Positions 10,300-61,300 of a stretch of DNA of 64,000 bases are shown here, one piece after another (the first letter of the stretch is position 1; every line of letters begins with the position of its first letter). The position numbers were made by a program, and so were the translations under genes. The stretch covers positions 62,001 to 126,000 of the IMG/VR virus record IMGVR_UViG_3300037110_000087. One strand, 5' to 3'. Under the pieces are notes generated by a model, which worked only from the letters and a program-made list of their open reading frames with translations, made no database searches and had not been told where the DNA came from.

Positions 10300-10425
10300 A
10301 TGAGAACCAGAAAGAGAATGACCTCCGCAAGAGTTATTTTGATTGCCCTAGGCATACTATGGTGGGTCCTCTCTCTACCCTGGCGACTAGTTAAAAGGAT
10401 ACTTGATGAAATTAAGAATTGCTAA
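10300..10425 (+). CDS. Possible 41-aa single-pass membrane peptide
   Basis: MRTRKRMTSARVILIALGILWWVLSLPWRLVKRILDEIKNC, translated by hand; below the ORF-track cutoff. Confidence 0.3.
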   Translation: MRTRKRMTSARVILIALGILWWVLSLPWRLVKRILDEIKNC

Positions 10426-11437
10426 AATCAAAAGTACCAAGATGGCCTTTATCAGAACAAAAGCTATGGCTCAAGGAGACTTATTTAGAGCCGTTAATAC
10501 CGCTATTAAATACGGAGAAGATTATTCTGAATTGGCAAAGTTTGGTAAGAATGGTGGACAGTTCACAGAAGAAGAGAGAGCCTGCTTAATAGAAGAGATT
10601 CGCGCTCTTACTTCCACCAGGGAGAACATAGGAGAGCTTCAGAACCTACTCCGGGTGGTTGAAACTTCCCCGGCCATTAGTGACTTAGGAATGGTTGGTA
10701 AGGTGGAGAAGGAAGCCGGTAGAGAACTAAAGGTAAAAGATCGTAAGAATTTCCGCAGTAGAGATATGAAGAGAGTCTTCCTTGACATTGATGGAAAAAG
10801 TTACCCAGCTTACTCGGAAGATGCTAGCGGTAAATGGCTTACTCCGTATTTCACAAAAGAAGTAGCGGATCAAGTTGTACGCGACTGGAATACCATTGAT
10901 GAGGAAGGCGGTCATCTTGATTATGATGATGACTCCATTGAGGGTGCATACTATGATGAAGAAAATGGCATCCGGTTCGAAGGTGAAGAATGCTACGTGG
11001 ATGGTGAACTAACAATTCTGTTCCCTATAGGTGAGGGTGAATGGGGTTGGGATATTGATTCTGGTTACGAGCGTAGGGAAAGAAACCCTATTGACTATAA
11101 TAAAATAAAAAATATCAGTGGAGATAAGACCCTCGCTCCGGGTGGAAAGATTCCTGGAATCAAGACAGAAGACGAAGGAAGAGAACTTAGTCCAGAAGAG
11201 CTTGAAATTACTGATTCCGACAAGGATTTCTTGAGAGGCATGGGTATCAAGGGCAAGCGCATCCGGGTCGTGGCAGTTAATGATGTCAATGCAGTACCGG
11301 AAAAATTCAAGCCCAAAGAAACTAAGAAACAACCAGCTGAAGTTGTTGAAGGTCTGGGAATCACTACTAATGGGCCAGCTGCGACCACAGAAGATCTAAT
11401 GACTCCTGTCGAATCAGTAGCGAAGGTGAAGGAATAA
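10403..11437 (+). CDS. Multi-segment protein with weak leader (MKLRIA), acidic central domain and GIKG module; putative virion cargo
   Basis: Basic N-terminus ending RTKA; acidic 'WLTPYFTKEVA...LFPIGEGEWGW' domain; EITDSDKDFLRGMGIKGK module. Confidence 0.7.
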   Translation: MMKLRIAKIKSTKMAFIRTKAMAQGDLFRAVNTAIKYGEDYSELAKFGKNGGQFTEEERACLIEEIRALTSTRENIGELQNLLRVVETSPAISDLGMVGKVEKEAGRELKVKDRKNFRSRDMKRVFLDIDGKSYPAYSEDASGKWLTPYFTKEVADQVVRDWNTIDEEGGHLDYDDDSIEGAYYDEENGIRFEGEECYVDGELTILFPIGEGEWGWDIDSGYERRERNPIDYNKIKNISGDKTLAPGGKIPGIKTEDEGRELSPEELEITDSDKDFLRGMGIKGKRIRVVAVNDVNAVPEKFKPKETKKQPAEVVEGLGITTNGPAATTEDLMTPVESVAKVKE

Positions 11438-26074: not shown

Positions 26075-26512
26075 GTGATGAGACAGCTTAGCTTTTACTG
26101 CGGTGACTACCAAGCCGCATTGAAGTATTTTAACGCCAACAATCCAAATTCCCACATGGAGAAGCTCACCCAGGATCTGCAGACCGGCGATCAGATGGTT
26201 GAGGAAACCCGACAATATATAGGATCATTCCTCGACAATACCCTGATTACCTATGGGGCCTTCTGGAACCAGGAAACCAGCCCACTCTATTTGTTCTCCA
26301 ATTGTGAGTTTGTGTTCAACACCCTGCGTCTACTGGTTGCCGAAGGGAAGCTGGATCGAAATCAGGTGAACATCCTCTATTTCGAGGATAAAGATGCCAA
26401 TTCCCCTCACATGGGTCTAATGATCGGGAAGAATGGACAGCTTAACTGCTGGCCCTACGGATTCTTTGATACCATGGGGAAGCTGCTGACACGGCTGATG
26501 GAACTGCGCTAG
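26075..26512 (+). CDS. Stand-alone DUF3696-like domain protein
   Basis: NTLRLLVAEGKL...VNILYF...IGKNGQLNCWPYGFFD...LLTRL. Confidence 0.7.
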   Translation: MMRQLSFYCGDYQAALKYFNANNPNSHMEKLTQDLQTGDQMVEETRQYIGSFLDNTLITYGAFWNQETSPLYLFSNCEFVFNTLRLLVAEGKLDRNQVNILYFEDKDANSPHMGLMIGKNGQLNCWPYGFFDTMGKLLTRLMELR

Positions 26513-28653
26513 CTTCCTATTGGAAATAATTTTACATAAGTCTTTATGTAGCCACTGATATCACTAAGGCCCTCCCACAACCTGTAGGATCCACACTGAA
26601 AATTTACGATCTCTGGATGTTTCTTTAGCCACTGATCCAATTTCGGCCATCTAATCTTATATGTAGCTAGCCAATGGATTCCGGGGATAACAATTTCTGC
26701 AGCGTTATTCTCGTACTTTGAAGGTATTGGTTTAAAATTAAATTGGTTACTAAAGGGATCTAATCGAGATAGCCATAATTTATAACCATCATCTGATGGG
26801 TCAACGTAGTTCAGGAGATGAAGTTTCTCACTTTCTCTGAGTCCGTCATAAGCTTCATTGTAGATTAATCTATATTTTTCCTCTTCATACTGTTGTTTAG
26901 CAAGATCGAATTTAGGAGCGTAACCCAATAAATGTTTCTTCAGATACTCGGTAGAGAATTGGATGGGATCAAACATATCCGCATCATCAAACAATTCAGG
27001 ATAAAATTCATCGGAATCGTTTAAATATCCACTCACAAAATCAAAAACCTTCTTCGTCCCACGAATCAAAGGAACTAATTTATCAAAATCCTTAATCCTG
27101 TTACCCTTGAAATGGTTAATGACACTAAGTATATCACCTATGTGAACCTTCTTCTGAATCAGCAGATCAAGATCCTTTGCTATATAAGATTCATATTCCT
27201 GGCCAGGATAGTCCAAGGGATTCACACTTTGAAGAGTAATCTTTGGTGTCACCCAAGTAGGACCGTTCATTTTTCGCAAGTAAGGAACGCAATTAATCTT
27301 ATTTTGGGCATAATCCATTAATCTTTCGTCACGTACATTTCTACTAGTGGCTACTTCAATCAGGGCGTCTATCATTCCCTTTGCTGCTTTTTGTTTTCTT
27401 ATTTCTAAACATTTATCGAGAACCTCAGGCCAGACATAGCCTGCCTGTTTACAATATTGTCCAATTTTGTCCAATTTTGTATTAGCTCCCCAATCAACAT
27501 AGTCTTTATCAGTTATTGGTATAATGAACCAATTTTGGAACATCTTAGGCTCAATCAACAGTTGTCTCTTCTTGATCTTTCCAGCCTTTAGCATTACCTC
27601 CATCTCTGAAAGAGTCTTGATGGGTATATCTTTCTGGAACTGATCAATATACTGAGCACGAAGATTCGAAGAAGTCTTCTTGATCGCACGTTCAGCTTCG
27701 GGCCAAGCTGCACCAATTACATAAAGGGCATAGCCTGCAGCCCACATACCCTTATTAACAATAGCGGCTTCAACATTAGGATCCCTGGGACCAAAATCTT
27801 CAAACCACCCTCTGATTAGATTTTCCTTATCCATGACCTGAGCATCAAACACCTTTGGTTCAAGTTCTGGATAGCGTCTAATCATAATACGCTCTAGTAC
27901 GCTAGCGATCATGACTACTGACTTAGTACCTAGAATCTTTAGATATTTGTCCGAAGGTTCGACGTAGGGAAGAATCCTCTCACAATAATCAACCATCTCA
28001 GGATCTTTCGTCTTATCCCTTATTTCATGAACTAAGTCATAGACCTGATTATTTTTGAGATGATAACCATCTCTGAAGCTCCGATCCCCACGATCACAGA
28101 ACTGACCTGAATCTGGATGTAACTGGGCGTAGGGTTTCCCATCTCGGTAAAAAATCCATAGGGGTCCATCCTTGAGATAGCTGGCAGCAGTCTTCGTACT
28201 GGCCGCCGTACACCAATTGGTATTTGATCCCAAAACTACCGCAGCCTGAGGGGTTGTTACCCGATAAACAATCCAGGGGTCTTCTTTATATTTAATCTCC
28301 GACCCATTAATGCCTTCGTGAACATTTCGCTTCTCTTGCTTCTTTGAATCACCAAATTCATCCAGAGCTTTAAACAGAGAATTGGGAGTATAGGAACCAA
28401 TGTCTGTACTATGGGATTCTTTAAACTGTGAGTTCTTCAGGCGAGTGAATTTCTCGAGTAGACCACGAATCTTTTCGACATCCTCTGGTATTTTGATATT
28501 TTTTGCTTTAATTTGTTTGACCAGCCAGTCGGTATAATTAGAAGGGGGATCAATCTCATCAGCTTGATCCAAGACCTCTGGACCCACTGAATACTTTCGC
28601 ATCAACAGCTCTTTCTTTCTCTCATTGATAACTGCACTAAACCGGAAGGTCAT
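26509..28653 (-). CDS. Large leader-bearing protein with PcfJ-like TNWCTA domain and WPE-type helical repeats
   Basis: MTFRFSA start; VYRVTTPQAAVVLGSNTNWCTAA; AWPEAERAI and VWPEVL repeats. Confidence 0.65.
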   Translation of the reverse strand: MTFRFSAVINERKKELLMRKYSVGPEVLDQADEIDPPSNYTDWLVKQIKAKNIKIPEDVEKIRGLLEKFTRLKNSQFKESHSTDIGSYTPNSLFKALDEFGDSKKQEKRNVHEGINGSEIKYKEDPWIVYRVTTPQAAVVLGSNTNWCTAASTKTAASYLKDGPLWIFYRDGKPYAQLHPDSGQFCDRGDRSFRDGYHLKNNQVYDLVHEIRDKTKDPEMVDYCERILPYVEPSDKYLKILGTKSVVMIASVLERIMIRRYPELEPKVFDAQVMDKENLIRGWFEDFGPRDPNVEAAIVNKGMWAAGYALYVIGAAWPEAERAIKKTSSNLRAQYIDQFQKDIPIKTLSEMEVMLKAGKIKKRQLLIEPKMFQNWFIIPITDKDYVDWGANTKLDKIGQYCKQAGYVWPEVLDKCLEIRKQKAAKGMIDALIEVATSRNVRDERLMDYAQNKINCVPYLRKMNGPTWVTPKITLQSVNPLDYPGQEYESYIAKDLDLLIQKKVHIGDILSVINHFKGNRIKDFDKLVPLIRGTKKVFDFVSGYLNDSDEFYPELFDDADMFDPIQFSTEYLKKHLLGYAPKFDLAKQQYEEEKYRLIYNEAYDGLRESEKLHLLNYVDPSDDGYKLWLSRLDPFSNQFNFKPIPSKYENNAAEIVIPGIHWLATYKIRWPKLDQWLKKHPEIVNFQCGSYRLWEGLSDISGYIKTYVKLFPIGS

Positions 28654-28662
28654 TTGAATTCC

Positions 28663-29175
28663 TTAAGATTCCCACATTGGTGTCATAACCTTAGCCCATA
28701 CTGCACCATAAGAATCCTCACTTGACTGGTTGATCCAAGTTTCGTCAATTCCGGGTCCGGTGATTGCAATCTCGTCGGCAAAATCTTCTGTCAAGCATTG
28801 ACTAATGCCAGTCTTCATTTCTTCGATAGAGCTGTAGTCTTCATCCCAACTGCCACCAGAGTCGGTCTGACGGAATTCCACATGATAACTGCCACTCGAT
28901 GTGGGTTCCAGATCTGCTTTCTTCACCTTGTTCTTCAGAGGCTTGACAGCACTCTTGTCATTGCCAGATTTGTTGTCCTTGTTGAACTTGATCTGAGGAT
29001 ACTTTTTGGTCTTGGCCAACAGAGGATCAGAGAATGGGGTTTCCAACTCTGGAGCGCCCACATTTGGTCCATCGATTAGAGGCAGAACGGCACCCTTGTC
29101 GTTGCCAGAATCATTTCTCTTATTGAACACAATAGTTGGATATTTCTTGACAGATTTGAAGTTTAATTTAGACAT
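28663..29175 (-). CDS. Leader/YPTI-module protein with acidic C-terminal domain
   Basis: Two YPxIxFNK..SGNDK.AV.PL modules, then KKA and an acidic domain. Confidence 0.75.
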   Translation of the reverse strand: MSKLNFKSVKKYPTIVFNKRNDSGNDKGAVLPLIDGPNVGAPELETPFSDPLLAKTKKYPQIKFNKDNKSGNDKSAVKPLKNKVKKADLEPTSSGSYHVEFRQTDSGGSWDEDYSSIEEMKTGISQCLTEDFADEIAITGPGIDETWINQSSEDSYGAVWAKVMTPMWES

Positions 29176-29179
29176 AATT

Positions 29180-29686
29180 CTATCCTCTTTTCAATTTTAA
29201 CATTTTGGGCTTTAGTTTTCCTTTGATACCCATTCCTTTCAGGAAATCTTTATCAGCATCAGTGATCTCAGGCAATGGCTCAAGATCCATCAATTGATCT
29301 TTGATCCCCTCCATCATTTTCTGATGTTTCTTGATTCTTTCTTCCCTTTCCTCCCTGGTCGCGAATGTGTTGTTAGCACAGTCTATACAAATGGTTGATT
29401 CACCATCCTCACTCACACAGATTGGATCTTCTTCGGTATCCTTGATTCCACCACCACACCAGTCACAATTAATCACATCGCCCAGACCAGCTTTCTTGGC
29501 TTCCAGCATCTCTTTCAGTTCACCGCCCTGATCCTTCAGTTCTTTCTTGTCTTCTTTCTTGGTCGGATGCTTGAGGAATTTCACCAGTTCCTTATGTTCA
29601 TCAATGGCGTCCTCTAAGGACATCGAGTAAGTGTCATTCTTGATCGTGTCAGATTGCTTGACAAATGCTTTTAAATTAAGTTTCAT
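29180..29686 (-). CDS. Leader-bearing protein with CxxC..CxxC zinc finger and GIKG module
   Basis: Start MKLNLKA at 29686; CDWC...CIDC; EITDADKDFLKGMGIKGK. Confidence 0.75.
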   Translation of the reverse strand: MKLNLKAFVKQSDTIKNDTYSMSLEDAIDEHKELVKFLKHPTKKEDKKELKDQGGELKEMLEAKKAGLGDVINCDWCGGGIKDTEEDPICVSEDGESTICIDCANNTFATREEREERIKKHQKMMEGIKDQLMDLEPLPEITDADKDFLKGMGIKGKLKPKMLKLKRG

Positions 29687-31153: not shown

Positions 31154-32272
31154 TTAGAGTCTGGTGCCCTTGTTCACGCCGTTCGCGTTAACGATGACGG
31201 GTGCGACGATCTCGCGGATGAGCCAGCCACGTGCGGGGATACCCAGGACGTTCTTGTTGATTGGCTCGCTAACGAGGCCCTGGCGAACCAGGAACTGACC
31301 GAGAGTCTTGGGGTGTGAGAAGAAGTAAATCTCACCGGCCTGGAGGACGCGCAGCTGAGAGTTGATGAATGCGTCAGTGTGCATTGTCACACCAAGCAGA
31401 CTACCAAGCTCACCAGTCAGCACGATTTCATGCTTGGTGACGGGATCAAACCAGGAAGCGAAGGTAGGATCAGCTACCAGATCGTTCATGAGGTTGTTAG
31501 CCATCCAGCAATTGCTCACTGGTAGACCGCGATTCTCAACCTGATTCTTCAAGCTCTGATAGACCGCAGGGGTCAAGCTGGAGAAGAAAGTGGGAACGTT
31601 GAGGGTGGCAGCAGCCTGATCAGCCAGGGTCTTCCACTGGCGGTCTTCCTGCACCATGACCATTTCCATACCGTCCTCAAGCTTCTCTTCAAGAAGATCA
31701 GCACCGAGGCGAGCGAGTTCCTTTTCCTCAATCAGGATGTGTGACTCGATGTAATTCTCACGCAGGTAAAGCTCTCTCTGCTTGATGTGAGATACAGGGG
31801 TCTGGCCATCAGTTGACATCGAGAAAGCAAGGGTATCCTGCTTGCGGATGTAGACTTTGCACTCTTCCTGGACCTTGAGTTCACGTTCCTGAGCGAAACG
31901 GCGAAGGAAACCAGTACGGCTGATTGTGGTGCGGATTTCGTTGGTCACTTCTTCACCGATGGTGCCGAAGTTTGCAGCGGAACGGGTTAAGCTAGCGGTG
32001 CGGATATCAGAGGCTAGCTGATCCAGGGTTTCGCGAGCAGAAGCCTGCTTCTGAATCTGGCCCTTCTGAGCAGCACTAACGATGTTAGCAATCTGCTGGA
32101 AGGCATCACGCTTGTTGTAGGCGTTAATCTCGCCATTGCTGTTTGCGACGGCTTCGTTGGACTGGGAATACCCGCCCTTGGAGGTCACGCCACCAGCTTT
32201 CTGCTCTGAGGCAGGAATGTCGGTACCGGTAAGGGTAGCAACAAACGGGTTTCTTTTTGGTGTTACGGCCAT
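31154..32272 (-). CDS. Major capsid protein (HK97 fold)
   Basis: 372 aa; NGEINAYNKRD, RTGFLRRF, QEDRQW, WFDPVTKHEIVLTGELGSLLG; strong codon bias; followed by a terminator. Confidence 0.8.
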   Translation of the reverse strand: MAVTPKRNPFVATLTGTDIPASEQKAGGVTSKGGYSQSNEAVANSNGEINAYNKRDAFQQIANIVSAAQKGQIQKQASARETLDQLASDIRTASLTRSAANFGTIGEEVTNEIRTTISRTGFLRRFAQERELKVQEECKVYIRKQDTLAFSMSTDGQTPVSHIKQRELYLRENYIESHILIEEKELARLGADLLEEKLEDGMEMVMVQEDRQWKTLADQAAATLNVPTFFSSLTPAVYQSLKNQVENRGLPVSNCWMANNLMNDLVADPTFASWFDPVTKHEIVLTGELGSLLGVTMHTDAFINSQLRVLQAGEIYFFSHPKTLGQFLVRQGLVSEPINKNVLGIPARGWLIREIVAPVIVNANGVNKGTRL

Positions 32273-36403: not shown

Positions 36404-36811
36404 ATTGCGATCTTGATCTGTTCTGGATAAAAGGCAACCCAGGAATCCGCTCGATCATGAGCGGCTTCATATTCATTTCGATAAACTAACCCATCGTAAC
36501 CGTTCATAGTGGCTCTAATCTTGGGGATCAGGCCCTAGATCTTTCACACGTTGAGGGTTTTTGATATTTAAATAGACTGGTATATAGCGAATTCCTTCTT
36601 CTCCGCGAAAATCCAAACGATCGGCATGTTCATCCACCTGTGAGAGAGTACCAAAATGGGCACCCATTTTTGTATCGAATGTACCAAAGTCATGTGAAGT
36701 GACATGATATAGTTTTAAAGGTTTCCCTTTAGAATCAACCACCTTGCTGCCTGAGAACCAGAATGTATCAAGTTCGGCGGTCTTAAGAAAAGCCCTCAGG
36801 GTGAGTTTCAT
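36400..36811 (-). pseudogene. ART-PolyVal-like ADP-ribosyltransferase, leader-bearing, frameshifted
   Basis: MKLTLRA...SKVVDSKGKPLKLYHVT...YIPVYLNIKNP stops at 36515; the expected C-terminus NGYDGLVYRNEYE...SWVAFYPEQIK lies in another frame and ends at 36400. Confidence 0.7.
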
Positions 36812-36812
36812 T

Positions 36813-37202
36813 TTATCCGTCCCTATATTTTTCGCCCAGAGCGTTAAGGGCGAGAAAACCTTTATCTGTGCCTCTCCAATTCTCCCCAGTGAAGGTATCA
36901 ATCAGGAAGACTGTGTTACAAGCACAGTAAGTCTTTAGAAAGTGTTTGACTGCCGCGAAATTAAGGGACAACCTCGGCCCTATTATTTCGAAGACCCCCA
37001 ATCCATCAGTGGAGAGTCTACACCAGCCAGCAGCCTTCATCGTGTCTGCTATGTCACCGAAATCCTTGTAGTCTCTTTTGACAATTTGGTACGCCATATC
37101 ACGATGACCCTCGTAGGCACAAGGTATCATTTCGAGAGTGTTCAAATTGGCCCAGCCACACCCTGATGGTTGTTTGATATTAGCAACCAAATGGAGTTTC
37201 AT
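36813..37202 (-). CDS. Leader-bearing hypothetical protein (GW...GH...GWxR family)
   Basis: MKLHLVA start. Confidence 0.7.
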   Translation of the reverse strand: MKLHLVANIKQPSGCGWANLNTLEMIPCAYEGHRDMAYQIVKRDYKDFGDIADTMKAAGWCRLSTDGLGVFEIIGPRLSLNFAAVKHFLKTYCACNTVFLIDTFTGENWRGTDKGFLALNALGEKYRDG

Positions 37203-37624
37203 TACATATACTCCCCGGTCACCACGTTCATGATTTTCACGTGCTCAAAGATCGCGATGCTTCCGGCCTTGTCGCCTTGGACATAAGCGTCGAAGCCTTT
37301 CTTGCGCAGGGTTTCGAAGAACTCAATCGTCGCGTGGTTCATTTTCTCGTAGTGCTTTTCTCGATCGGCCTCAGTGGCGTGATAAGGATTTCTAACATCG
37401 AGCCAGCAGGTGTATAGTTCCCCTTCTTCTCCAATAAGGTTTGATTGGTACTCTTGATTCTTGGTGAACCAGATACCTTCCGGCTTTCGTTTCAATACAT
37501 TCAATTTCTTGGCCGCGCTACCATGGTACATACGACAGTTAATCTCGGTCTTAGGGAATGGACATTTGGACTGTTTGAATTCAGTCTTGAATCCTTTTCC
37601 CTTCGCAACAAAATGGAGTTTCAT
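37202..37624 (-). CDS. ART-PolyVal-like ADP-ribosyltransferase domain, leader-bearing
   Basis: MYHGS...GIWFT...YTCWLDVRNP...GFDAYV...IAIF. Confidence 0.7.
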   Translation of the reverse strand: MKLHFVAKGKGFKTEFKQSKCPFPKTEINCRMYHGSAAKKLNVLKRKPEGIWFTKNQEYQSNLIGEEGELYTCWLDVRNPYHATEADREKHYEKMNHATIEFFETLRKKGFDAYVQGDKAGSIAIFEHVKIMNVVTGEYM

Positions 37625-38400
37625 TTCTTTCTCCGATAATTAAGCTTCCGACTATACTGGTAGTGATTAGCCTCAATCCAACCCACCACCTTGTCCAGGT
37701 CCGCAGCCTTGAAATAGGGATGACTTTCATCACCCACGTACCACTCGTCGTCATACCCATTCTTTGAGACAGGTACAATATTCCGAGCAGAAGGACCCCA
37801 GAAAATAATCTGCTGCTCTTCATCACCAAAGTGGGAAACTTCGATTCCACTGGCTCGGAAAATAACAGCCTCTGTGCCATACTTGTTGGTCGGATAGTTG
37901 TAATTGATGTCAAAGGCGAAATTGTAACCAATGCCTCGTTTCCTGTTCTTAAACCAAGTGGTCAGACCAAGCTGCTCCATTTCCGCGAAGCCATACTTGA
38001 AACCGTCAGTCGCGATTGCGTAGGGGTCATCACAGAAGTGAATCAACCACCCATCCTTGAACACGCTATCGAATTCCAGATGCATGTAAGAGGGACATTC
38101 TACCGCGTCGTGGTTCATTGCATCATATTGCTTCTCATTGAAGAATTTGACCATGAGCGCATCAGGCATCGAATAGATTGAGTCGTAATTGAAATCCCCG
38201 TCTTCACCAAACAGGGTGATGAATTCACTCACTTCTTCATAAGGTTCTTCTTCTAAAAATTCCGAAAGCAAATGGGGAAAGACACTGGCTAGTTCACGCC
38301 CTTTATCAGCCTCATCCATTTCCAGATAATTCTTAAGATGCACAATTTCTTGGCAAAGGTAAGCCTGTCTGGTGATGTGGGCCTTTAGGTGTAGTCTCAT
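37621..38400 (-). CDS. Leader-bearing protein, possible ART fold
   Basis: MRLHLKA; WLIHF...GYNFAF...KYG...HFGDEEQQIIFW. Confidence 0.5.
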   Translation of the reverse strand: MRLHLKAHITRQAYLCQEIVHLKNYLEMDEADKGRELASVFPHLLSEFLEEEPYEEVSEFITLFGEDGDFNYDSIYSMPDALMVKFFNEKQYDAMNHDAVECPSYMHLEFDSVFKDGWLIHFCDDPYAIATDGFKYGFAEMEQLGLTTWFKNRKRGIGYNFAFDINYNYPTNKYGTEAVIFRASGIEVSHFGDEEQQIIFWGPSARNIVPVSKNGYDDEWYVGDESHPYFKAADLDKVVGWIEANHYQYSRKLNYRRKK

Positions 38401-43065: not shown

Positions 43066-44808
43066 TTATCCCCAATAAGTGATATAACCAGTTAAAGATG
43101 CTGTAGAGAACCAGTTGAAAACTGTGATCGTGACCGGCTGGCCTTGAACAAATGTGTTCTCGTCCACTTGACCACCAACGGTCGCAGGTCCAATATAATA
43201 AATAAGTCCTGAACTAAGGTTATAATAACCACCAAGGGAAAGTTTTGGCGTGGAAGTACTGGTAGGAACTGCGCTATAAAGGGCGCAATTGTCACTTATT
43301 GTATAATAACCAGTCTGGTTAACTGAGAAATTCACAAATCCTGAAGCATATTCATTTGTGGTGTATTGGCTATAGTCCACTATATTGAAGGCATTAGATG
43401 CCATATTCATGGTTATGTAAGAATGCCCACTACTTAATTCGGTGATGGTTGTCGTAACCGTAGTGGGAGTGCTACCGTTGCCATTAAATACTGAGTTGAA
43501 CTGGACTGTGGCAGGAGGAGTCCAAGCTGGAGGAGTCCAAGCTGGACCCTGTGGACCAGTATCTCCCTGTGGACCCTGTGGACCAACATCACCTTGGGGT
43601 CCTTGTTCACCAGTAGCACCAGTAGCACCAGTAGTGCCAGTAGTGCCAGTATCACCCACATTTCCAGTTGGTCCTGGAGGGCCAGCAGGACCAACTGGTC
43701 CGACCGGACCAGTTGGTCCCATTGAGGTAAAAACAAAAACCCAATTACCTGTTACAACACCGGTTGGTACATAATCCCAAACGACGGTTCCATCTACCAT
43801 TCCCGTCCCAGTTCCACTAGGCCCAGTTCCACTGCTACTAGAGGTACCTGCTGTGGTGCAAATATATTCAGAACCACCATTTGCGCATACCTGACCAATT
43901 GCATAACCAATATTGACAGTCCAAGGGGTATAGAGCCAATAATTTCCTGAAACTGTATCAAAATACCAGCTCCCGAGGCTCCCTAATATAGTAGTGGGCG
44001 CACCTGATCCGCCTTGGATAGGATAACCAACTGTGCCCCTTGGTCCGATGTCGCCAGTTATACCAATTGGTCCCGAAGGTCCTTGTGGTCCTGCTGGCCC
44101 TACTATTCCACCGTTAATGATATCAAAATCATTAAGGCCAGCCATATAAACGTAGGAAGGGATCACATCGCCCACAACTAGTGCAATATAGTGTAGTAGG
44201 ATATTTGAATATCCTGCATTTCCGAAGGAAATTATTACTGATCTGGTGCCAGCGGGAGCAGTAAAAGTGACGCCATAGATATTAAGCTCGGAGATCTGCG
44301 GCTGTGCCGATCCGATTGTGACCTGATTCTGATCCCTTACGGCTATGGACAAAGGGACTGTCGGACCCTCAGCCTTGATTGCGATCGTGAAATCAGTGTT
44401 TCTAATTAGTCCAGATCCATCTTCAAGAGTGATAATCTCGGTTAGTATGGTTCTGTTCATGGCTGGATTTACTACATCCAAGGTCAAGACATTCGCAGGG
44501 CTGGCAGTTTGCGATACTTGCCAATTAGAAGAAATATTTGGAATGCTTCCTGTATTGGCGACAACACAAATATAAGTAATACCAATATAGACTACTCTGT
44601 CATTAATAATATATCCAGTGGTGTTGCTCCAGACTGGAACATTACCAGAAACAGGGGTAATATTAAATCCCTTTGAATTGTCATAGGGAACCCAACCGGC
44701 AACGGGACTATAAATATTTGTATTGGCGACAAAGAAAGGGTTTCTAAGAAGGTTAAAAGAATCCTTGGTTGAAACGCTTTGATTCACACTGGCTAGAGAG
44801 AGATCCAT
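43066..44808 (-). CDS. Collagen-repeat fibre protein with CBM5/12-like modules
   Basis: [18 protein letters not shown]; [16 protein letters not shown]; about 21 Gly-X-Y triplets. Confidence 0.75.
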
Positions 44809-55319: not shown

Positions 55320-55961
55320 ATGTTATTTAACGCCAACAACATTCTTGCAGCAGTCAACAACAAGGCTGACGTTCTAAATCGTTCAGATTTGGAATGCATC
55401 TCCGTTAAGGCATGTGGATCAAAGGGTGATTCCAAGATCTATATGGTCCGTTACGCTTATGCAGCCGTAGCTGGGGTACCAACTAGAGTTCAGTTCCAGG
55501 CATCCATTAATAAGGATCTTGGTCAATCAGTTACGATTGATCCATGTCATATTCTTGTCGGCCAGTACGCAATCGTTTCCAAGGTTTATAGCAAGTATCC
55601 ACTGACTGAACAGACCATGCCAAAGCAGTATATTGGTGGCATGAAGGCTATTCTTGAAGAGAATCCTACTGATAAGCTGATTGAGATGGGTGACGAAGTT
55701 CGTGGTTTTGATGGTATGTCAACTTTCCTGGGTCAGGTTGTGGGATACGATGACAATGAAGTCAGCCTTCGCACTGGTGCCGTTATCAAGTCAGTTGGTT
55801 TTGATCAGATCATCGAAGTAAAGGCCGCTCCTCGTTTCGCTCCGATCGATCAGGCTTGCTACGATTATTATATTCAGATCTATCCTAAGGAGTTTGTTGA
55901 AAAGCTTACTGCCAAGGAAGACTATCTGAAGAGCCTCCAGAAGAGATCTGCTGAGAAGTAA
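55320..55961 (+). CDS. Probable virion structural protein
   Basis: Last gene of the tail operon, followed by a hairpin. Confidence 0.55.
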   Translation: MLFNANNILAAVNNKADVLNRSDLECISVKACGSKGDSKIYMVRYAYAAVAGVPTRVQFQASINKDLGQSVTIDPCHILVGQYAIVSKVYSKYPLTEQTMPKQYIGGMKAILEENPTDKLIEMGDEVRGFDGMSTFLGQVVGYDDNEVSLRTGAVIKSVGFDQIIEVKAAPRFAPIDQACYDYYIQIYPKEFVEKLTAKEDYLKSLQKRSAEK

Positions 55962-55973
55962 GTTTCCTCTTCG

Positions 55974-56020
55974 ATGGCCAAGCTTTCTTCCGACTCTCCA
56001 GGAAAGCTTGGCCATTTCTC
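55974..56020 (+). terminator. Terminator-like 14-bp stem-loop
   Basis: atggccaagctttc-N14-gaaagcttggccat followed by ttctcttattt. Confidence 0.75.
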
Positions 56021-56034
56021 TTATTTGGTGATCA

Positions 56035-57243
56035 ATGAAACTCCATCTTAAAGCCTTTGTTAAAAAAGCTTATGGTACGGATTACGCCTTTACAACAGGT
56101 GAATCTGTTAAGGTAGATGGGAAGGCGGTTTCCATTTGGTGCATTTTAGTTGTTGATACACCAGACTACATTGGTGGGCGAATGGCCATCAGAAAATGTG
56201 ATCTTGGTCTAGATGAAGATGAACACGAATATTTCGTCATTTTTACAACTAGCAGGAATCTGACCGGCGAAGAAATCGAAGGTGGAATCTATCTTAGAGA
56301 AATGATCGGTGATTGGGATGAAATTTACGAACTCTTGGATTGGAGTGAATGGAGTCCAAGGGACCAGTACAATCTTGGGGAATTTGAATATTTCGAAGAA
56401 ACTGGTGAGTGGCCTGATGCAATGAAACCAGAACTCTCTGAATCAGATATAAAAGAATTAAAGCAATGGGGAATTAAAGGAAGGAATAAAATGGAACTTC
56501 ATCTAGTAGCGACTATTCAGAAGAAACCGATCAAAAAGATATCGGTCCATCGCAAAAAGGGCGCTATTCCTCCTCCAGTTGTTACCCCGACACCTCAACC
56601 GGTTAATCCACCGGCCCAGACTGAAGTAGTGAATCAGAATACACAGACCACGAACACCCAGACTCAGGCTCCTCCTCCTAAGTGGATGGAAAATCCCTGC
56701 TACAATCCTCTATACATTGGTGATACTGGACAATCAGCTGCTTCGCCAGAGAAGGCTGAAGCAGCCGCCAAGGATAGATTGGCTAAGGGTATTATTGACC
56801 AATTTCATAAACAGAAATATTCCTTTAGTGAACAAATAATTGGGGCATGGGTTAAGAAATGGAGCAAGATCGGAATTGAAGGCGTTGATGGTCACTTCCA
56901 AGATCAGGGTTGGAATCGTGCCTGGGCAACGCTGGATGCTAGACAGTATGGCGATTTGGCCAAATATGTTAGAGATCACCCAACTGGTGAACAGAATGGG
57001 CAAAATCTCCAGCAGAACAACAACCAGACTACCCAGAACAACAACCAGAATTCCAAGAATATCGTGTATGATAAGACCCAGACCAAGACTTCTGATAAGG
57101 GGCCTCTGGCACCAGGATTCCTTCCTGATGGTCATTATCCATCAAAACAGGATCTGCTGAAGCAGTTTCCGAATGTACAAAATGACGATAGTTTAGCACG
57201 ACGCCAATATGATCTAGCAAGACACCAACAGCCACAAGGATAA
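56035..57243 (+). CDS. Leader-bearing two-part protein (second leader at 56491) with Pro- and Gln/Asn-rich segments
   Basis: MKLHLKAFVKKA; GIKG module; internal MELHLVA. Confidence 0.75.
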   Translation: MKLHLKAFVKKAYGTDYAFTTGESVKVDGKAVSIWCILVVDTPDYIGGRMAIRKCDLGLDEDEHEYFVIFTTSRNLTGEEIEGGIYLREMIGDWDEIYELLDWSEWSPRDQYNLGEFEYFEETGEWPDAMKPELSESDIKELKQWGIKGRNKMELHLVATIQKKPIKKISVHRKKGAIPPPVVTPTPQPVNPPAQTEVVNQNTQTTNTQTQAPPPKWMENPCYNPLYIGDTGQSAASPEKAEAAAKDRLAKGIIDQFHKQKYSFSEQIIGAWVKKWSKIGIEGVDGHFQDQGWNRAWATLDARQYGDLAKYVRDHPTGEQNGQNLQQNNNQTTQNNNQNSKNIVYDKTQTKTSDKGPLAPGFLPDGHYPSKQDLLKQFPNVQNDDSLARRQYDLARHQQPQG

Positions 57244-57246
57244 GAA

Positions 57247-58302
57247 ATGAAGATGAAATTTGTTGCCAAAAAAGTTAAGGTTTACCCAACTATTGTCTTC
57301 AACAAGGATAATAAGTCGGGTAATGATAAAAGTGCTGTTCAGCCCTTGAAGAAGAAAGCAGGGATTCAGGATGACGCTCACAAGTGTGTATTTTGGATTG
57401 ATGAGTTTGATGACAATCCAGACGTAAACCCCGATTGTTTTGTCGATCTCGCAAATCCGGCTATGACCAAAGAATTATGTGCCAAAGCTGGGATTGAACT
57501 GATTGGCTACGATTCGAGCAGAGGGTGTGCCTCAGGATATCTACCCGATGATTTATATAATGAACTCGAAACTACGGGTTCGTTCGATAAGACCGTCCAA
57601 GGAAGCAATGGAGTTTATTATCAGATTCATGCTCCCTTCGAAACCCTCCCTGAAGATACCCTTAATTTCGAGGGAAAGACCAAGAGATACCCAACTATTA
57701 CCTTCCACAAGAAGAATCAGTCAGGTAATGATAAAAGTGCTGTTCAGCCTTTGAAGAAAGCTGAAGTAAGGACCGCTGAGAAATCCACTAAATGTGTCGA
57801 TTGTGGTACCCCAGGTACTGTAAAAGATATGGTGTCTAATAATGAAGGTGCTGGTTACGTTTGCAACAAGTGCTTTCACAAACGCCGTATTGAAGATGAT
57901 AAAGCCAAGAAAGGATCCCCTAAGACCGCCTTGGTGCCCAAAGAACTGAAACTTCCTCCCGAATCTCTTAAAGGACCGCAGGGTCCAGCGAATAAAGAGA
58001 CTGTAGAGAAGCAAAAACTCGCTCCGGTTCCTCATGAACCGATGAAGGCTAAAGCGAGTGCGCAGAATCCAGTATTTGTCACCCTAGAAGAAAGTGAAGA
58101 GAACGAGAACGGGACTAGCATGACCTTCTATTATCACAAGGGAACAGCCACCACAGATGAGATTAAGCAATTTATTATTGATCATGATGGACGTTTTGCC
58201 TGTGGTCTTTCGGTGATGGTTAATGACGGTATGACAGTTGATCTCTGTGAGGAACAGCCTTTTCCAGAATATGATAGGTTTCAAGCTAATCCAGTGGGTT
58301 AG
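57247..58302 (+). CDS. Leader/YPTI-module polyprotein-like protein with acidic and Zn-finger segments
   Basis: Two YPTI modules, CVDC..CNKC, KTAL..KGP module. Confidence 0.75.
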   Translation: MKMKFVAKKVKVYPTIVFNKDNKSGNDKSAVQPLKKKAGIQDDAHKCVFWIDEFDDNPDVNPDCFVDLANPAMTKELCAKAGIELIGYDSSRGCASGYLPDDLYNELETTGSFDKTVQGSNGVYYQIHAPFETLPEDTLNFEGKTKRYPTITFHKKNQSGNDKSAVQPLKKAEVRTAEKSTKCVDCGTPGTVKDMVSNNEGAGYVCNKCFHKRRIEDDKAKKGSPKTALVPKELKLPPESLKGPQGPANKETVEKQKLAPVPHEPMKAKASAQNPVFVTLEESEENENGTSMTFYYHKGTATTDEIKQFIIDHDGRFACGLSVMVNDGMTVDLCEEQPFPEYDRFQANPVG

Positions 58303-58311
58303 GAGGATAAA

Positions 58312-59181
58312 ATGACGAAGCTAAAATTCAAAGCAAAGAAAACCAAGAAATACCCTACTATTACCTTTCACAAGGATAACAAGTCAGGCAATGACAAGAG
58401 TGCTGTCAAGCCTCTGAAGAAAAAGGCTTCACCTACCTCCATTCTCTTTGTGGATGAGATTGAAGGTGTACTACACGAACATATTATCAACTGTGAAGCT
58501 ACTGCTCCTCCTGAGGAGATCCTTAGGGCAGTTGATATGGCATGCTTCGAGGGAGATGAAGAAGCACTCAATGAGAGTGGGCCACTCCGCCTAGTCTCTG
58601 ATACCACAATTGATGGTAATCGCGTTATCGAAGCTTGTTTTGGTGATAGAAATCATCAGGCTTGGATTGCAATTGGTCCTACTGCCAAAAGGGCTATCAC
58701 TAAAGCTTCTGATATGGATTTTGAAGCATCCGTCAAGACCGCTCTCAAACCAACCGAAGTGAAAATGAATCCGGGTTCCGAGAAGGGTCCCAAGGGCGAA
58801 CAGAACAAGGAGACTGTTGCTCAGAAGCCAATTATCACAGTCGAACCGGGCGAGAAAGATAAGGTAGAAAAGAAAGCTGCTGGAGAATGGGGTCCCGGTT
58901 CGGGAGCGATTTCCGGATCCTTGGCAGACAGGCTCAATCAGGCGAAAGCTTTCCCTGAGCGAATAAGCAGGGGTAAGTTCGAGCTTTGCAAATTCACTGA
59001 TGAAGTAGATCCCAGCACACAATGCTATGAAAATGACGGTCCTTGCGTTGGTTTCGAGGGTTGTGAGCTTTATCTTGATGATCATCCAGAAGGGTCTGAC
59101 AGAGGTGGTTATGTCGTTTTCTGCGAACTGAATGGGGAAACTGCTCATTTCGATGAAGGCATGGGTGACTGGGTGGACTAA
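58312..59181 (+). CDS. Leader/YPTI-module polyprotein-like protein with two acidic segments
   Basis: One YPTI module and one KTAL..KGP module; SD AGGAGG. Confidence 0.75.
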   Translation: MTKLKFKAKKTKKYPTITFHKDNKSGNDKSAVKPLKKKASPTSILFVDEIEGVLHEHIINCEATAPPEEILRAVDMACFEGDEEALNESGPLRLVSDTTIDGNRVIEACFGDRNHQAWIAIGPTAKRAITKASDMDFEASVKTALKPTEVKMNPGSEKGPKGEQNKETVAQKPIITVEPGEKDKVEKKAAGEWGPGSGAISGSLADRLNQAKAFPERISRGKFELCKFTDEVDPSTQCYENDGPCVGFEGCELYLDDHPEGSDRGGYVVFCELNGETAHFDEGMGDWVD

Positions 59182-59188
59182 CAAAGCA

Positions 59189-59629
59189 ATGAAGCTCCAT
59201 CTGGTCGCTAATATCAGGAAAGCAATCATCACCCAGCATACAGACCTGGGTGGTGAACCCATGAGTCCTATCATGGAAGCCATCTATTGGTGCCTGATCT
59301 TCAATATTGAGCGTTTTGTATCAGTTAGGGAACAAAAACAAGAATGGAATGGGTTCAAAAGCATTGTTCCCAATCCTGATGAAAAGCCAACTCGTAAGAT
59401 GATTGGGAATGAAAAACCCCTCTCCTACCTCATGGTCAAATATTATTGGAAAGCGTTGAAACTCGATCGAGTTTTAGATCAGGAGATCAAGGATCATTAT
59501 CTTTTTGAGATTGATGCAGATTCTGAAGAGGAACTTATTGCTAGATTCGATCAAATCCTACAAATGATTGAAGGTCATGTCTGGGATCTTATCCTCGCCA
59601 GAAAAAAGGCCGACGATTTAAAACCCTAG
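59189..59629 (+). CDS. Leader-bearing hypothetical protein
   Basis: Start moved to MKLHLVANIRKA, just after the upstream stop. Confidence 0.7.
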   Translation: MKLHLVANIRKAIITQHTDLGGEPMSPIMEAIYWCLIFNIERFVSVREQKQEWNGFKSIVPNPDEKPTRKMIGNEKPLSYLMVKYYWKALKLDRVLDQEIKDHYLFEIDADSEEELIARFDQILQMIEGHVWDLILARKKADDLKP

Positions 59630-59673
59630 TCAATAAATGTTAAACTGGAGGAGAAATCCTCTGGAGTTAACTT

Positions 59674-60372
59674 ATGTCTGATCAGCAAGACCAATCAATC
59701 GATAGCCTCTTAGGTCAAATTGATGATACCTTTGATCCGACCTCTTATATCCCCACCGAACTGACTAACCATGTCTGTTGCGTCTGTGCTCTCCCTATCG
59801 GCCAGAGGATGGAACTTGAGAAGGAATTGTTCGAAACCTTCGATATTGAGGCATCAGTCACTAAGAATGCTCCTATCACTCTCCGAGATATTAGGAAGCA
59901 TCTGACTGAGTGTGTGGTGGAGAGAGATTCCATTATCCAGACTGGCAAGATGATTGGAGAACTTCAGGCCCAGCTCAGTTTGTTTGTCGAGGAGATGGAC
60001 AAATATCGGCTCTTGATTAATTCTAGTGAAAAGAATCCTGATATGATGCTGGCCTATAATGATATGTTTAAGAACTTCCGGACCTCAGTGGACTCAATTC
60101 GCAAGTACAATCCCCCACAGAGACAGGCCGAGGATATTAAGAATAACGCCATTAAGCCCTTGGTAATTCAGCTGCTCAGGACTACTATTGAGCAGTTCCG
60201 TAATACCAAGGACTATGTGGTAAATGCTTTTCCAGAGGCCAAGGACCGGATGGAAGAATCTTTTAGAATTGCCCTGAAGAACTGGGGTGAAATTGCTGAG
60301 TCCCAGCATAAACAATCATTAGTGAAAATGGCCGAGATCCTTGGGGTCCAACCCTCTGATCTAATGAAATAG
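59674..60372 (+). CDS. Helical protein with CxxC...H motif; possibly terminase small subunit-like DNA-binding protein
   Basis: VCCVC...DIRKHLTEC followed by a coiled-coil; function weakly inferred. Confidence 0.4.
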   Translation: MSDQQDQSIDSLLGQIDDTFDPTSYIPTELTNHVCCVCALPIGQRMELEKELFETFDIEASVTKNAPITLRDIRKHLTECVVERDSIIQTGKMIGELQAQLSLFVEEMDKYRLLINSSEKNPDMMLAYNDMFKNFRTSVDSIRKYNPPQRQAEDIKNNAIKPLVIQLLRTTIEQFRNTKDYVVNAFPEAKDRMEESFRIALKNWGEIAESQHKQSLVKMAEILGVQPSDLMK

Positions 60373-60377
60373 AGGTT

Positions 60378-60566
60378 TTGATGAAAGTACATTTACAAGC
60401 AACAGTTATTAAAACAGGCAGAGGCAAGGTAACTCTCCATACCGAGTTCAAGAAGCTGAAGAATGAGACTCCAGCCTATGTGAAGGACAATATTGGTGTA
60501 GATATCGAGAAAGATATGGACAAGACTGTGGACTACATGAAAGAATCGGGCGAGTATCCAAAATAA
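60378..60566 (+). CDS. Small leader-bearing protein
   Basis: MKVHLQA start; SD GAGG. Confidence 0.6.
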   Translation: MMKVHLQATVIKTGRGKVTLHTEFKKLKNETPAYVKDNIGVDIEKDMDKTVDYMKESGEYPK

Positions 60567-60594
60567 TTCATTAAATCTTGCAAAGGTTAAATAC

Positions 60595-60623
60595 TTGACA
60601 ATACAGCTGTCAGAACTTATAAT
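60595..60623 (+). promoter_or_regulatory. Perfect sigma70 promoter TTGACA-N17-TATAAT
   Basis: Exact consensus. Confidence 0.9.
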
Positions 60624-60655
60624 GTGATGACTCTTAACAATGTCAAGGAGATTTA

Positions 60656-61300
60656 ATGAGTGGAACCGCTAAACCCGCATCCAAGAAACCAGCAACTGTA
60701 GTTCTTGATCAACTATGCAAAGAAGGTAACGCTGTTTATCTTCGCAATGTCCTGCAGAAGAGCAAGGGCGTGATGGGTGATCTTGTGGTGGCCCTGAAAG
60801 ATCCAATCGCGGACAAGGCCATTACCCTGTCAGTTCCTCGTAATTCCATCGTCTGTGCATCTGATCAAGTTACCAGTGAGGCTCTTAGAGGCTCTACTGA
60901 TCTCCGTCGCTATCTCCGTGAGGGATATTTGGAGATCATGACTCAGGATGAGTATGATGAAATTGCTGCAACTGAACCCCGTTTGATCGAGAAGAGCAAG
61001 ACCGAATTAAACCGCATGAACCGCACTGCTGCTGGCAATGGCAATGGTGATCAGGAAGCACCCAAGCAGGTCGGCAAGGGTGAGAATAAGAAGCCCGATG
61101 CCGCTCCTGATTACATTAGACCGGCTCTGGCCCAGGTCATCTCTCGTGCTCAGTTCGAAGATGGTGACGAAGGCGACTTGCTGCTTGACTTCAAGGCTCT
61201 GATTCCCTTTACCGGGATTGAGATTAGCCATCTGCAGTCCTCAATCAACACCATCCCCGATACCCTGAGAGACATTCGTCAGTTCATTATCGAGATGTAG
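60656..61300 (+). CDS. Hypothetical protein in its own transcription unit
   Basis: SD AAGGAG; STDLRRYLREGYLEI motif. Confidence 0.7.
   Translation: MSGTAKPASKKPATVVLDQLCKEGNAVYLRNVLQKSKGVMGDLVVALKDPIADKAITLSVPRNSIVCASDQVTSEALRGSTDLRRYLREGYLEIMTQDEYDEIAATEPRLIEKSKTELNRMNRTAAGNGNGDQEAPKQVGKGENKKPDAAPDYIRPALAQVISRAQFEDGDEGDLLLDFKALIPFTGIEISHLQSSINTIPDTLRDIRQFIIEM

What the first reader, a model, noticed from the sequence alone, without database searches (positions are those of the whole stretch)
57247..59181. Five copies of a 25-aa module YPTIxFxKxNxSGNDKSAVxPLKKKA alternating with variable acidic cargo domains
Copies lie at 57283-57360, 57688-57762 and 58351-58428 (+), and at 29077-29142 and 28915-29001 (-), about 28 kb apart and with synonymous differences. 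A second shared module (KTALxPxExKxxPxSxKGPxGxxNKETVxxQK) occurs at about 57922-58017 and 58735-58827. Between these basic modules sit unrelated, strongly acidic 50-110-aa domains and a CxxC..CxxC finger. The layout looks like polyproteins built from constant carrier segments and exchangeable payloads. Small acidic payloads are candidates for DNA mimics or anti-defence proteins (inference).
Basis: partly seen in the sequence, partly recalled or inferred. Interest (0 to 1): 0.8.

Follow-up and report, generated by a model that had tools for sequence, protein, structure and literature searches.

The report
Shared address leader on phage proteins
A 307-kb peat phage puts the same short basic N-terminal leader, in four proteins lengthened by a strictly conserved 26-residue module, on at least 16 otherwise unrelated proteins; the leader most likely sorts them to one destination, probably the capsid for injection into the host, but this has not been shown.

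Summary
The 22-26-aa module occurs five times in the window at the stated places. A sixth copy lies elsewhere on the same 307-kb contig. Synonymous sites between copies are saturated and amino-acid change is low, so selection acts on the peptide. A profile search of 1.84 billion protein representatives found only the four proteins of this contig.

The module extends an 11-residue N-terminal leader, M-K-L-H/N/K-L/F-x-A-x-h-K-K. That leader starts at least 16 genes in the ~112 kb examined. Recognised capsid, tail-fibre, baseplate and replication genes lack it.

Cargoes behind the leader include at least two ART-PolyVal ADP-ribosyltransferase domains above Pfam's cut-off, two zinc ribbons and many strongly acidic orphan domains. 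Three leader-type genes, one a looser variant, lie just downstream of the major capsid gene. AlphaFold2 gives the leader and module very low confidence, between moderately confident cargo domains.

Best reading (confidence ~0.45): a genome-private address peptide, analogous to the T4 capsid targeting sequence or the P1 DarB N-terminal signal. Multi-module ORFs look like fusions of neighbouring cassettes. Encapsidation, processing and any anti-defence role are untested. No prohead protease was found, and no relative exists for comparison.

The parts
57247..58302 (+). ORF g57247 (351 aa). Layout: leader 57247-57282; module copy A 57283-57360; acidic domain A; degenerate internal leader 57658-57687; module copy B 57688-57765; CxxC..CxxC zinc ribbon 57793-57873; second basic module 57922-58017; acidic C-terminal domain B.
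58312..59181 (+). ORF g58312 (289 aa). Layout: leader 58312-58350; module copy C 58351-58428; acidic alpha/beta domain C (aa 55-135, pLDDT 70-85); second basic module 58735-58827; acidic Cys-rich C-terminal domain D.
28663..29175 (-). ORF g29175 (170 aa). Layout: leader; module copy D 29077-29142; short linker; degenerate internal leader 29002-29025; module copy E 28936-29001; acidic domain E.
29180..29686 (-). Leader-bearing ORF g29686 (168 aa, starts MKLNLKAFVKQ). It has a zinc ribbon at 29378-29467 and a C-terminal junction motif ...DKDFLKGMGIKGK at 29204-29272. It lies just downstream of the capsid gene and a homing endonuclease.
26509..28653 (-). 714-aa ORF with a looser leader variant (MTFRFSAVINERKK) and an internal leader-like MEVMLKAGKIKK near aa 354. 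It is the third gene in the row after the capsid gene. Membership is tentative.
56035..57243 (+). ORF g56035 (402 aa). Layout: leader (MKLHLKAFVKK); acidic domain; junction motif 56428-56490; then an in-frame RBS plus ATG and a second leader (MELHLVATIQKK) at 56491. This is an apparent fusion of two units.
59189..59629 (+). Leader-bearing ORF g59189 (146 aa, starts MKLHLVANIRKA).
60381..60566 (+). Leader-bearing ORF g60381 (61 aa, starts MKVHLQATVIKT, followed by a second strand KVTLHTEF).
37621..38400 (-). Leader-bearing ORF g38400 (259 aa, starts MRLHLKAHITRQ). The cargo is an orphan.
37202..37624 (-). Leader-bearing ORF g37624 (140 aa, starts MKLHFVAKGKG). It has a weak ART-PolyVal match (26 bits, below the 31.2-bit cut-off).
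36813..37202 (-). Leader-bearing ORF g37202 (129 aa, starts MKLHLVANIKQ).
36515..36811 (-). Leader-bearing ORF g36811 (98 aa, starts MKLTLRAFLKTA). It matches the N-terminal half of the ART-PolyVal domain (32.5 bits, above the cut-off).
10406..11437 (+). 343-aa ORF with a one-residue-shorter leader variant (MKLRIAKIKSTK). The junction motif ...DKDFLRGMGIKGK at about 11192-11278 is followed by a leader-like strand RIRVVAV. Membership is tentative.
31154..32272 (-). Major capsid protein gene, included as context. It has no leader. A terminator-like hairpin follows at 31127-31109.

Best explanation
The 25-aa module is the extended form of a genome-private N-terminal address peptide. The short form is an 11-residue basic leader with an alternating pattern that suggests a beta-strand: M-K-L-H/N/K-L/F-x-A-x-h-K-K. 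In seven proteins a second short strand follows (hT/ShHxxK). In four proteins this becomes the invariant YPTIxFxKxNxSGNDKSAVxPLKKK segment, which gives the first 40 residues a net charge of +9 to +12 in three of the four (+4 in the fourth).

Inferred mechanism: during assembly the leader docks on a common receptor. The most likely receptor is the prohead interior or its acidic scaffold-like proteins, which are encoded next to the capsid gene. The attached cargoes are ADP-ribosyltransferases, zinc-ribbon proteins and small, very acidic orphan domains. They would be packed into the head and delivered to the host with the DNA, as with the T4 internal proteins and Alt, or P1 DarB. ORFs with two units arose by tandem duplication and fusion of adjacent cassettes. 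Internal copies may still act as docking or processing sites.

Shown here:
- the motif family and its confinement to one genome;
- purifying selection on the peptide;
- the N-terminal position of the leader on unrelated cargoes;
- ART-PolyVal domains among the cargoes;
- absence of the leader from recognised structural and replication genes.

Inferred only: the destination (capsid), any proteolytic removal, injection into the host, and what the acidic payloads do.
For: 1. Leader distribution. There are 11 N-terminal leaders and one internal leader in the window, and 5 more in contig positions 10-32 kb. Codon-shuffled windows give 0-1 matches. One member (L003 11587) was found by the PSSM without being in its training set, and it sits exactly at an ORF start.
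2. Protein-level selection. Leu-3 and Ala-7 of the leader use many different codons. In the module, dS is saturated while dN is low.
3. Unrelated cargoes. All-against-all BLAST finds only the leader, module and mod2 segments shared.
4. ART cargoes. ART-PolyVal (PF18760) lies behind the leader in L003 8596-9948 (51 bits) and g36811 (32.5 bits), both above the 31.2-bit cut-off, and more weakly in g37624. A further HGS-type candidate is at L011 19905. This ART clade is characteristic of proteins predicted to be virion-packaged and injected. T4 Alt is the experimental precedent (PMC5512222).
5. ART homologues from other metagenomes share only the ART domain, never the leader. The leader is therefore an add-on specific to this phage.
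6. Specificity. The leader is absent from the capsid protein, collagen-like tail fibres, baseplate genes, PolA, UvsX and PhoH.
7. Position. g29686, g29175 and the 714-aa ORF (a looser variant) follow the capsid gene directly. The 56035-60566 cluster sits between tail-fibre and baseplate genes.
8. Possible receptor. Very acidic scaffold-like proteins flank the capsid gene (net -36 and -20). They could bind a basic leader.
9. Structure predictions. AlphaFold2 models the leader and module with very low confidence (pLDDT 22-32) next to moderately confident cargo domains.
10. Precedents. The T4 capsid targeting sequence is 10-20 aa on otherwise diverse internal proteins (PMC3012670, PMC5694885). 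The first 30 aa of P1 DarB are sufficient for encapsidation (PMC9024508). SPN3US ejection-protein paralogues keep identical first 15 residues while the rest diverges (PMC5694885).
Against: - There is no proteomic, structural or genetic evidence for encapsidation.
- No prohead protease was recognised in the ~112 kb examined, and no consistent cleavage motif follows the leader.
- Genomic context is mixed. Five leader genes lie among replication genes (PolA, SNF2 helicase) and four next to PhoH and MoxR.
- Promoter and terminator scans were uninformative about timing.
- The nearest cultured relative by capsid protein, PaBG, shows no such leader in the 50 kb around its capsid gene.
- The alternating pattern reads as a beta-strand, and it shows no resemblance to the T4 capsid targeting sequence as I recall it (not compared with a tool).
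- Internal module copies are as well conserved as N-terminal ones, so the module may act independently of the N-terminus.
- The AlphaFold2 runs used single sequences, so low confidence is weak evidence for disorder.
Confidence: 0.45

Rival explanations
1. The leader is a docking tag for a partner outside the capsid. Candidates include the MoxR-type AAA+ ATPase and VWA protein encoded on either side of one leader cluster, a replication or transcription factory, or a host complex. The tagged proteins would act in the infected cell and would not be packaged.
For: The leader is a short conserved peptide in a region modelled with low confidence, as expected for a linear binding motif. Five leader genes lie among replication genes. 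A MoxR-like AAA_5 gene (35270-36403) and a VWA gene (40206-41507) flank the 36515-38400 cluster.
Against: ART-PolyVal domains are typically linked to virion delivery. Three leader-type genes directly follow the capsid gene. No evidence ties MoxR or VWA to the leader.
Confidence: 0.2
2. The basic leader plus module is itself a small nucleic-acid-binding arm, a lysine-rich beta-hairpin or three-stranded sheet. It would tether the acidic domains to DNA in the capsid, on the incoming genome or on the host nucleoid, or mask them until it is displaced.
For: Net charge is +9 to +12 over 40 residues in three of the four module proteins, against -10 to -18 in the cargo. The alternating hydrophobic and lysine pattern fits a strand. 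Internal copies are conserved as strongly as N-terminal ones.
Against: The shorter leaders on most family members are only mildly basic. There was no match to any DNA-binding family in Pfam at E<=1 or in PDB sequences. AlphaFold2 predicts no stable fold. This reading is compatible with, and not exclusive of, capsid targeting.
Confidence: 0.15
3. The shared N-termini are historical residue. Genes would have spread by tandem duplication and illegitimate recombination at gene starts, with cargo replacement, and the leader would have no common function.
For: Members are clustered in tandem. Fusions keep an RBS at the junction. Copies C and E share a 35-nt identical run 29 kb apart, and this run breaks the Logan assembly. 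That suggests occasional gene conversion.
Against: Synonymous sites are saturated while the peptide is kept. The leader keeps Leu, Leu/Phe, Ala and hydrophobic positions with varied codons. Neutral relics would have decayed. Reads from four metagenomes show no structural variants at module boundaries.
Confidence: 0.1
4. The leader is an N-terminal degradation or turnover tag. It would be recognised by a host or phage AAA+ protease and would time the lifetime of these proteins.
For: The N-terminal Met-basic-hydrophobic pattern loosely resembles N-terminal ClpX recognition motifs. This comes from my own knowledge and was not tested.
Against: Nothing specific supports it. It does not explain the invariant 22-aa extension or the internal copies.
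Confidence: 0.05

Closest known systems
T4 capsid targeting sequence on internal proteins IPI/IPII/IPIII and Alt
   Same: A 10-20-residue N-terminal peptide shared by otherwise diverse proteins of one phage. The cargoes include an ADP-ribosyltransferase and small anti-restriction proteins. The genes are scattered in several loci. The internal proteins are highly variable and only the leader is conserved (PMC3012670, PMC5694885).
   Different: There was no match to any internal-protein family in PHROGs or Pfam. The alternating pattern reads as a basic beta-strand. Many more carriers exist (at least 16 in about a third of the genome). A 26-aa invariant extension is present, and internal copies occur. 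No T4-type protease or Glu-specific cleavage motif was identified. Encapsidation is unproven.
[quoted passage not shown]
   Same: An N-terminal signal of fewer than 30 residues is sufficient to load a large anti-restriction effector, or a reporter, into the head (PMC9024508).
   Different: In P1 a single protein carries the signal. Here it is a multi-gene family. There is no homology.
Ejection and inner-body protein paralogues of phiKZ and SPN3US
   Same: Paralogous head-internal proteins keep their N-termini identical while the rest diverges. The propeptides are cleaved after Glu (PMC5694885).
   Different: The capsid lineage differs: this capsid protein is 28-33% identical to those of PaBG, NCTB and phiRSL1. 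No protease or cleavage data exist here, and the cargoes are unrelated rather than paralogous.
Polyvalent proteins (Iyer et al. 2017)
   Same: The same effector class (ART-PolyVal) is used, and disparate domains are strung together and predicted to be injected with the DNA (PMC5512222).
   Different: The domains here are mostly separate small genes, each with its own leader, not one giant polypeptide. The module-bearing ORFs contain no recognised polyvalent-protein domain.
Acidic DNA-mimic anti-restriction proteins (Ocr, ArdA)
   Same: The payloads are small and very acidic (pI about 4.0-4.4).
   Different: There is no sequence or fold similarity. The best Foldseek E-values were 0.08 (PDB) and 0.011 (BFVD), to unrelated or uncharacterised proteins.

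Membership tests
T4-type capsid targeting sequence / internal proteins | A short N-terminal peptide shared by otherwise unrelated proteins of the same phage | tested here: met
   16 N-terminal leaders sit on cargoes with no mutual similarity.
T4-type capsid targeting sequence / internal proteins | Homology to known internal-protein or CTS families | tested here: not met
   PHROGs and Pfam gave no hits for any module protein. The profile search found nothing outside this contig.
T4-type capsid targeting sequence / internal proteins | A prohead protease is encoded and the leader is removed at a defined motif after Glu | tested here: inconclusive
   No protease family was recognised in the ~112 kb scanned out of 307 kb. 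A Glu follows 12-25 residues after most short leaders, but no consistent motif is seen.
T4-type capsid targeting sequence / internal proteins | The proteins are present inside virions and are ejected | not testable with these tools
   This needs virion proteomics. The phage is uncultured and comes from a peat metagenome.
Polyvalent proteins | Two or more disparate effector domains in one polypeptide, including hallmark domains | tested here: inconclusive
   g57247 has three or four segments but none matches a known domain. Hallmark ART-PolyVal occurs in other leader proteins as a single recognised domain.
Polyvalent proteins | Linkage to virion or head genes | tested here: met
   Met for part of the family. 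Three genes follow the capsid gene and six lie between tail-fibre and baseplate genes. Others lie among replication genes.
DNA-mimic anti-restriction proteins (Ocr/ArdA-like) | A strongly acidic surface | tested here: met
   Net charge is -10 to -18 and pI 4.0-4.4 for six payload segments.
DNA-mimic anti-restriction proteins (Ocr/ArdA-like) | Fold or sequence similarity to a known mimic | tested here: not met
   Foldseek against PDB and BFVD gave no match with E<=0.001. PDB sequence searches were empty. The models are only moderately confident.

The most novel reading that the evidence does not exclude
A huge phage uses a previously undescribed two-tier encapsidation code. The first tier is an 11-residue beta-strand leader. 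The second is an optional invariant 26-residue basic adaptor. Together they load dozens of orphan acidic effectors and several ADP-ribosyltransferases into the head for co-injection. Multi-unit ORFs would be true polyproteins cut at the adaptor. The adaptor sequence would then be a portable cargo-loading tag and a marker for discovering new injected counter-defence proteins.
Probability: 0.3. Interest if true: 0.75.

Novelty: new variant of a known kind. Interest (0 to 1): 0.55.

Why it matters
If the leader is a loading signal, it labels a whole set of proteins that the phage delivers at the first moment of infection. Most of these proteins are orphans. Delivered proteins of this kind are where counter-defence functions are expected and where sequence searches fail.

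It would show that the T4 and P1 principle of an N-terminal address peptide has arisen in an unrelated jumbo-phage lineage, with an unrelated sequence and on a much larger scale.

It would also give a short portable tag for protein encapsidation. Even if the destination is not the capsid, the pattern is a clean, testable case of peptide-based sorting in a bacterial virus: at least 16 unrelated proteins share one leader under purifying selection.

Tried and rejected
- Near-identical DNA in GenBank phages: none.
- Module profile against IMG/VR and against 1.84e9 protein representatives: only this contig. The further weak hits are repeat proteins that match only the DKSAVxPLKKK end, and their PDB counterparts are HEAT-like alphaRep repeats. 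I rejected them as spurious.
- Degenerate DNA pattern for MKLHLVANI in IMG/VR: two own sites plus one chance hit in a non-coding frame of an unrelated 60-kb contig.
- Capsid-protein-based search for related contigs in IMG/VR: self only.
- Leader search in PaBG, 50 kb around its capsid gene: none.
- Homologue searches with g38400, g57247 and the 450-aa ART protein: self or paralogue only, or the ART domain without the leader.
- ESM Atlas: best feature score 0.58 and TM below 0.3, uninformative.
- Foldseek with the g58312 model: weak YfjZ/Roadblock-like (PDB) and small uncharacterised phage proteins (BFVD), none significant.
- Reads and contigs of four metagenomes laid on 55400-61300, to look for cassette swaps or deletions between modules: none. 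The phage is identical in peat and freshwater samples. Only paralogous modules cross-map, and Logan contigs break at a 35-nt shared run.
- Promoter and terminator scans: counts no higher than in shuffles, so nothing on timing.
- DNA-level conservation (promoter, RBS or recombination site) as the cause of the shared gene starts: rejected because codons vary while residues are kept.
- Sec, Tat or lipoprotein signal: rejected on inspection, because the leader has no hydrophobic core or Cys.
- A remembered resemblance of leader plus module to Sso7d-type small basic DNA binders: no Pfam hit at E<=1, so I did not pursue it.
Full report
**What is there**

The window is positions 62001-126000 of a 307,124-bp viral contig from a peat metagenome, IMGVR_UViG_3300037110_000087 = Ga0395724_000015. 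It encodes PhoH, a UvsX-like recombinase, several collagen-repeat tail fibres and a major capsid protein. The capsid protein is 28-33% identical to those of the jumbo phages PaBG, NCTB and phiRSL1. Nothing similar at DNA level is in GenBank phages.

There are three copies on the plus strand, in ORFs 57247-58302 and 58312-59181. There are two on the minus strand, in ORF 28663-29175. A sixth copy sits in a 130-aa ORF about 95 kb upstream on the contig (L003 5995-6387). Sixteen columns are invariant. The second basic module, the CxxC..CxxC element and the acidity of the segments in between are also confirmed.

**It is a selected peptide, and it is private**

Most copy pairs are saturated at synonymous sites, yet dN is only 0.04-0.29. 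Only the two copies inside ORF 57247 are young. A profile HMM of the module searched against 1.84 billion representative proteins found four proteins with E below 1e-15, all from this contig. The other hits are lysine-rich or HEAT-like repeats that match only the last dozen positions. IMG/VR holds no other contig with the module. Full-length searches with ORF 57247 return only itself and its neighbour.

**The wider pattern**

Each module-bearing ORF begins with a short strand such as M-x-K-L-K-F-K-A-K-K. The same 11-residue pattern, M-K-L-H/N/K-L/F-x-A-x-h-K-K, starts many other ORFs:

- 56035, 59189 and 60381 on the plus strand;
- 38400, 37624, 37202, 36811 and 29686 on the minus strand;
- once internally, at 56491.

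Codon-shuffled windows give 0-1 matches, against 12 observed. A position matrix built from these sequences found a further true N-terminus that was not in the training set (L003 11587). It separates members (scores 21-33) from background (16 or less).

Walking along the contig brought the examined sequence to about 112 kb. The strict count is 16 N-terminal leaders. Three or four looser variants exist, at window 10406, window 28653 and L011 10438.

The leader is not a general property of gene starts in this phage. The capsid protein, tail fibres, baseplate genes, DNA polymerase, UvsX and PhoH all lack it. Leu-3 and Ala-7 of the leader are written with many different codons, so the constraint is on the protein.

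In seven members a second short strand follows the leader, as in KVTLHTEF or KKISVHRKK.

**What the leader is attached to**

Apart from the leader, the module and mod2, the proteins share nothing detectable. Recognisable cargo is the ADP-ribosyltransferase domain of polyvalent proteins (PF18760). It scores 51 bits in a 450-aa protein (L003 8596-9948) and 32.5 bits in g36811, both above the curated cut-off. It scores 26 bits in g37624. A further HGS-type candidate is at L011 19905.

Homologues of the 450-aa protein from other metagenomes share 39-49% identity over the ART domain only. They carry other partner domains and never the leader. Two leader proteins carry zinc ribbons. The rest are orphans, and many are strongly acidic.

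AlphaFold2 in single-sequence mode gives pLDDT 22-32 for the leader and module and about 30 for mod2. It gives 56-85 for the first acidic domain of each of the two ORFs in the finding. Foldseek, PDB sequence search and the ESM Atlas gave no significant match for these domains.

**Unit boundaries**

Three proteins carry a motif of about 20 residues just before a leader-like strand: PE-[LI]-[ST]-x-x-D-K-D-F-L-x-G-M-G-I-K-G-[KR], with variations. The sites are g56035 aa 132-152, the C-terminus of g29686 and g10406.

In g56035 this region still reads as a ribosome-binding site plus ATG, in frame with the upstream unit. That ORF is therefore most simply a fusion of two neighbouring genes.

The internal module copies in g57247 and g29175 are likewise preceded by decayed leaders, TLNFEGKTKR and PLLAKTKK. 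The leader strand has decayed where it is no longer N-terminal, while the module stays intact. This suggests two separable functions.

**Context**

g29686, g29175 and the 714-aa ORF follow the capsid gene on the same strand, separated from it only by an HNH homing endonuclease. The 56035-60566 cluster lies between tail-fibre genes and a block with SLT and Baseplate_J domains. Other members lie next to PhoH and a MoxR ATPase, or among replication genes. Context is therefore suggestive but mixed.

The genes on either side of the capsid gene encode very acidic proteins, with net charge -36 and -20. These are plausible partners for a basic leader. No prohead protease was recognised in the sequence examined.

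**Interpretation**

The best-supported mechanism is an address peptide. T4 internal proteins and Alt share a 10-20-residue capsid targeting sequence and are otherwise diverse counter-defence or host-modifying proteins (PMC3012670, PMC5694885). The first 30 residues of P1 DarB suffice for encapsidation (PMC9024508). SPN3US ejection-protein paralogues keep identical first 15 residues (PMC5694885). ART domains of the polyvalent-protein clade are predicted to be injected with the DNA (PMC5512222).

The present family fits that logic, with an unrelated sequence and on a larger scale. I put this at about 0.45. The rivals, with their confidences, are:

- a docking tag for a non-capsid partner (0.2);
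- a DNA-binding basic arm (0.15, not exclusive of capsid targeting);
- non-functional duplication residue (0.1, disfavoured by the selection signal);
- a degradation tag (0.05).

**Limits**

There is no relative to compare with. The structure models are single-sequence. About two thirds of the genome has not been inspected. No expression or proteomic data exist.

Metagenome contigs from four samples show the same sequence without structural variants at the modules. They give no evidence of ongoing cassette exchange.

Noticed in passing
window 29689-31074 (-): An HNH/homing-endonuclease gene (phrog_559, E = 2e-43) with repeated Cys-rich zinc-finger units is inserted between the major capsid gene and the leader-bearing genes.
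   Followed up: partly
window 60595-60623 (+): A perfect sigma-70 consensus promoter (TTGACA, 17 nt, TATAAT; 12 of 12) lies in the gap after the last leader gene and before ORF 60656-61300.
   Followed up: no
window 35270-36403 (+) and 40206-41507 (-): A MoxR-type AAA+ ATPase (AAA_5) and a protein with a weak VWA match flank the four-gene leader cluster at 36515-38400. They may form a chaperone pair.
   Followed up: no
window 58387-58421 and 28936-28970: Module copies C and E share a 35-nt identical run although they lie 29 kb apart. Logan contigs of the source run end exactly there. This suggests gene conversion, and it is an assembly hazard.
   Followed up: partly
window 57000-57060: A Gln/Asn-rich low-complexity stretch in g56035 shows 1-2-nt indels in another peat sample and cross-maps to other contigs.
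   Followed up: no
window 43-1662, 24007-24696, 43066-44808, 47875-50646: Four ORFs with collagen triple-helix repeats are present, typical of tail fibres. ORFs 20615-21079 and 21079-21468 share a conserved tail-fibre N-terminal domain.
   Followed up: partly
window 3483-3866 (+); L011 17991-19373: A SET-domain protein lies in the window. A papain-like Peptidase_C1 and a ParB-like (ParBc_2) protein lie elsewhere on the contig. These are possible host-modifying or counter-defence genes without the leader.
   Followed up: no
window 31127-31109 (-): A G+C-rich hairpin with a T-rich tail lies 27 nt after the capsid gene stop. It is a likely terminator or mRNA stabiliser.
   Followed up: no
L015 12613-15207 versus L013 3109-5511: The Logan and JGI assemblies of the same sample call an 864-aa and an 800-aa product for the same large gene upstream of the window. 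This is a possible strain or assembly variant.
   Followed up: no
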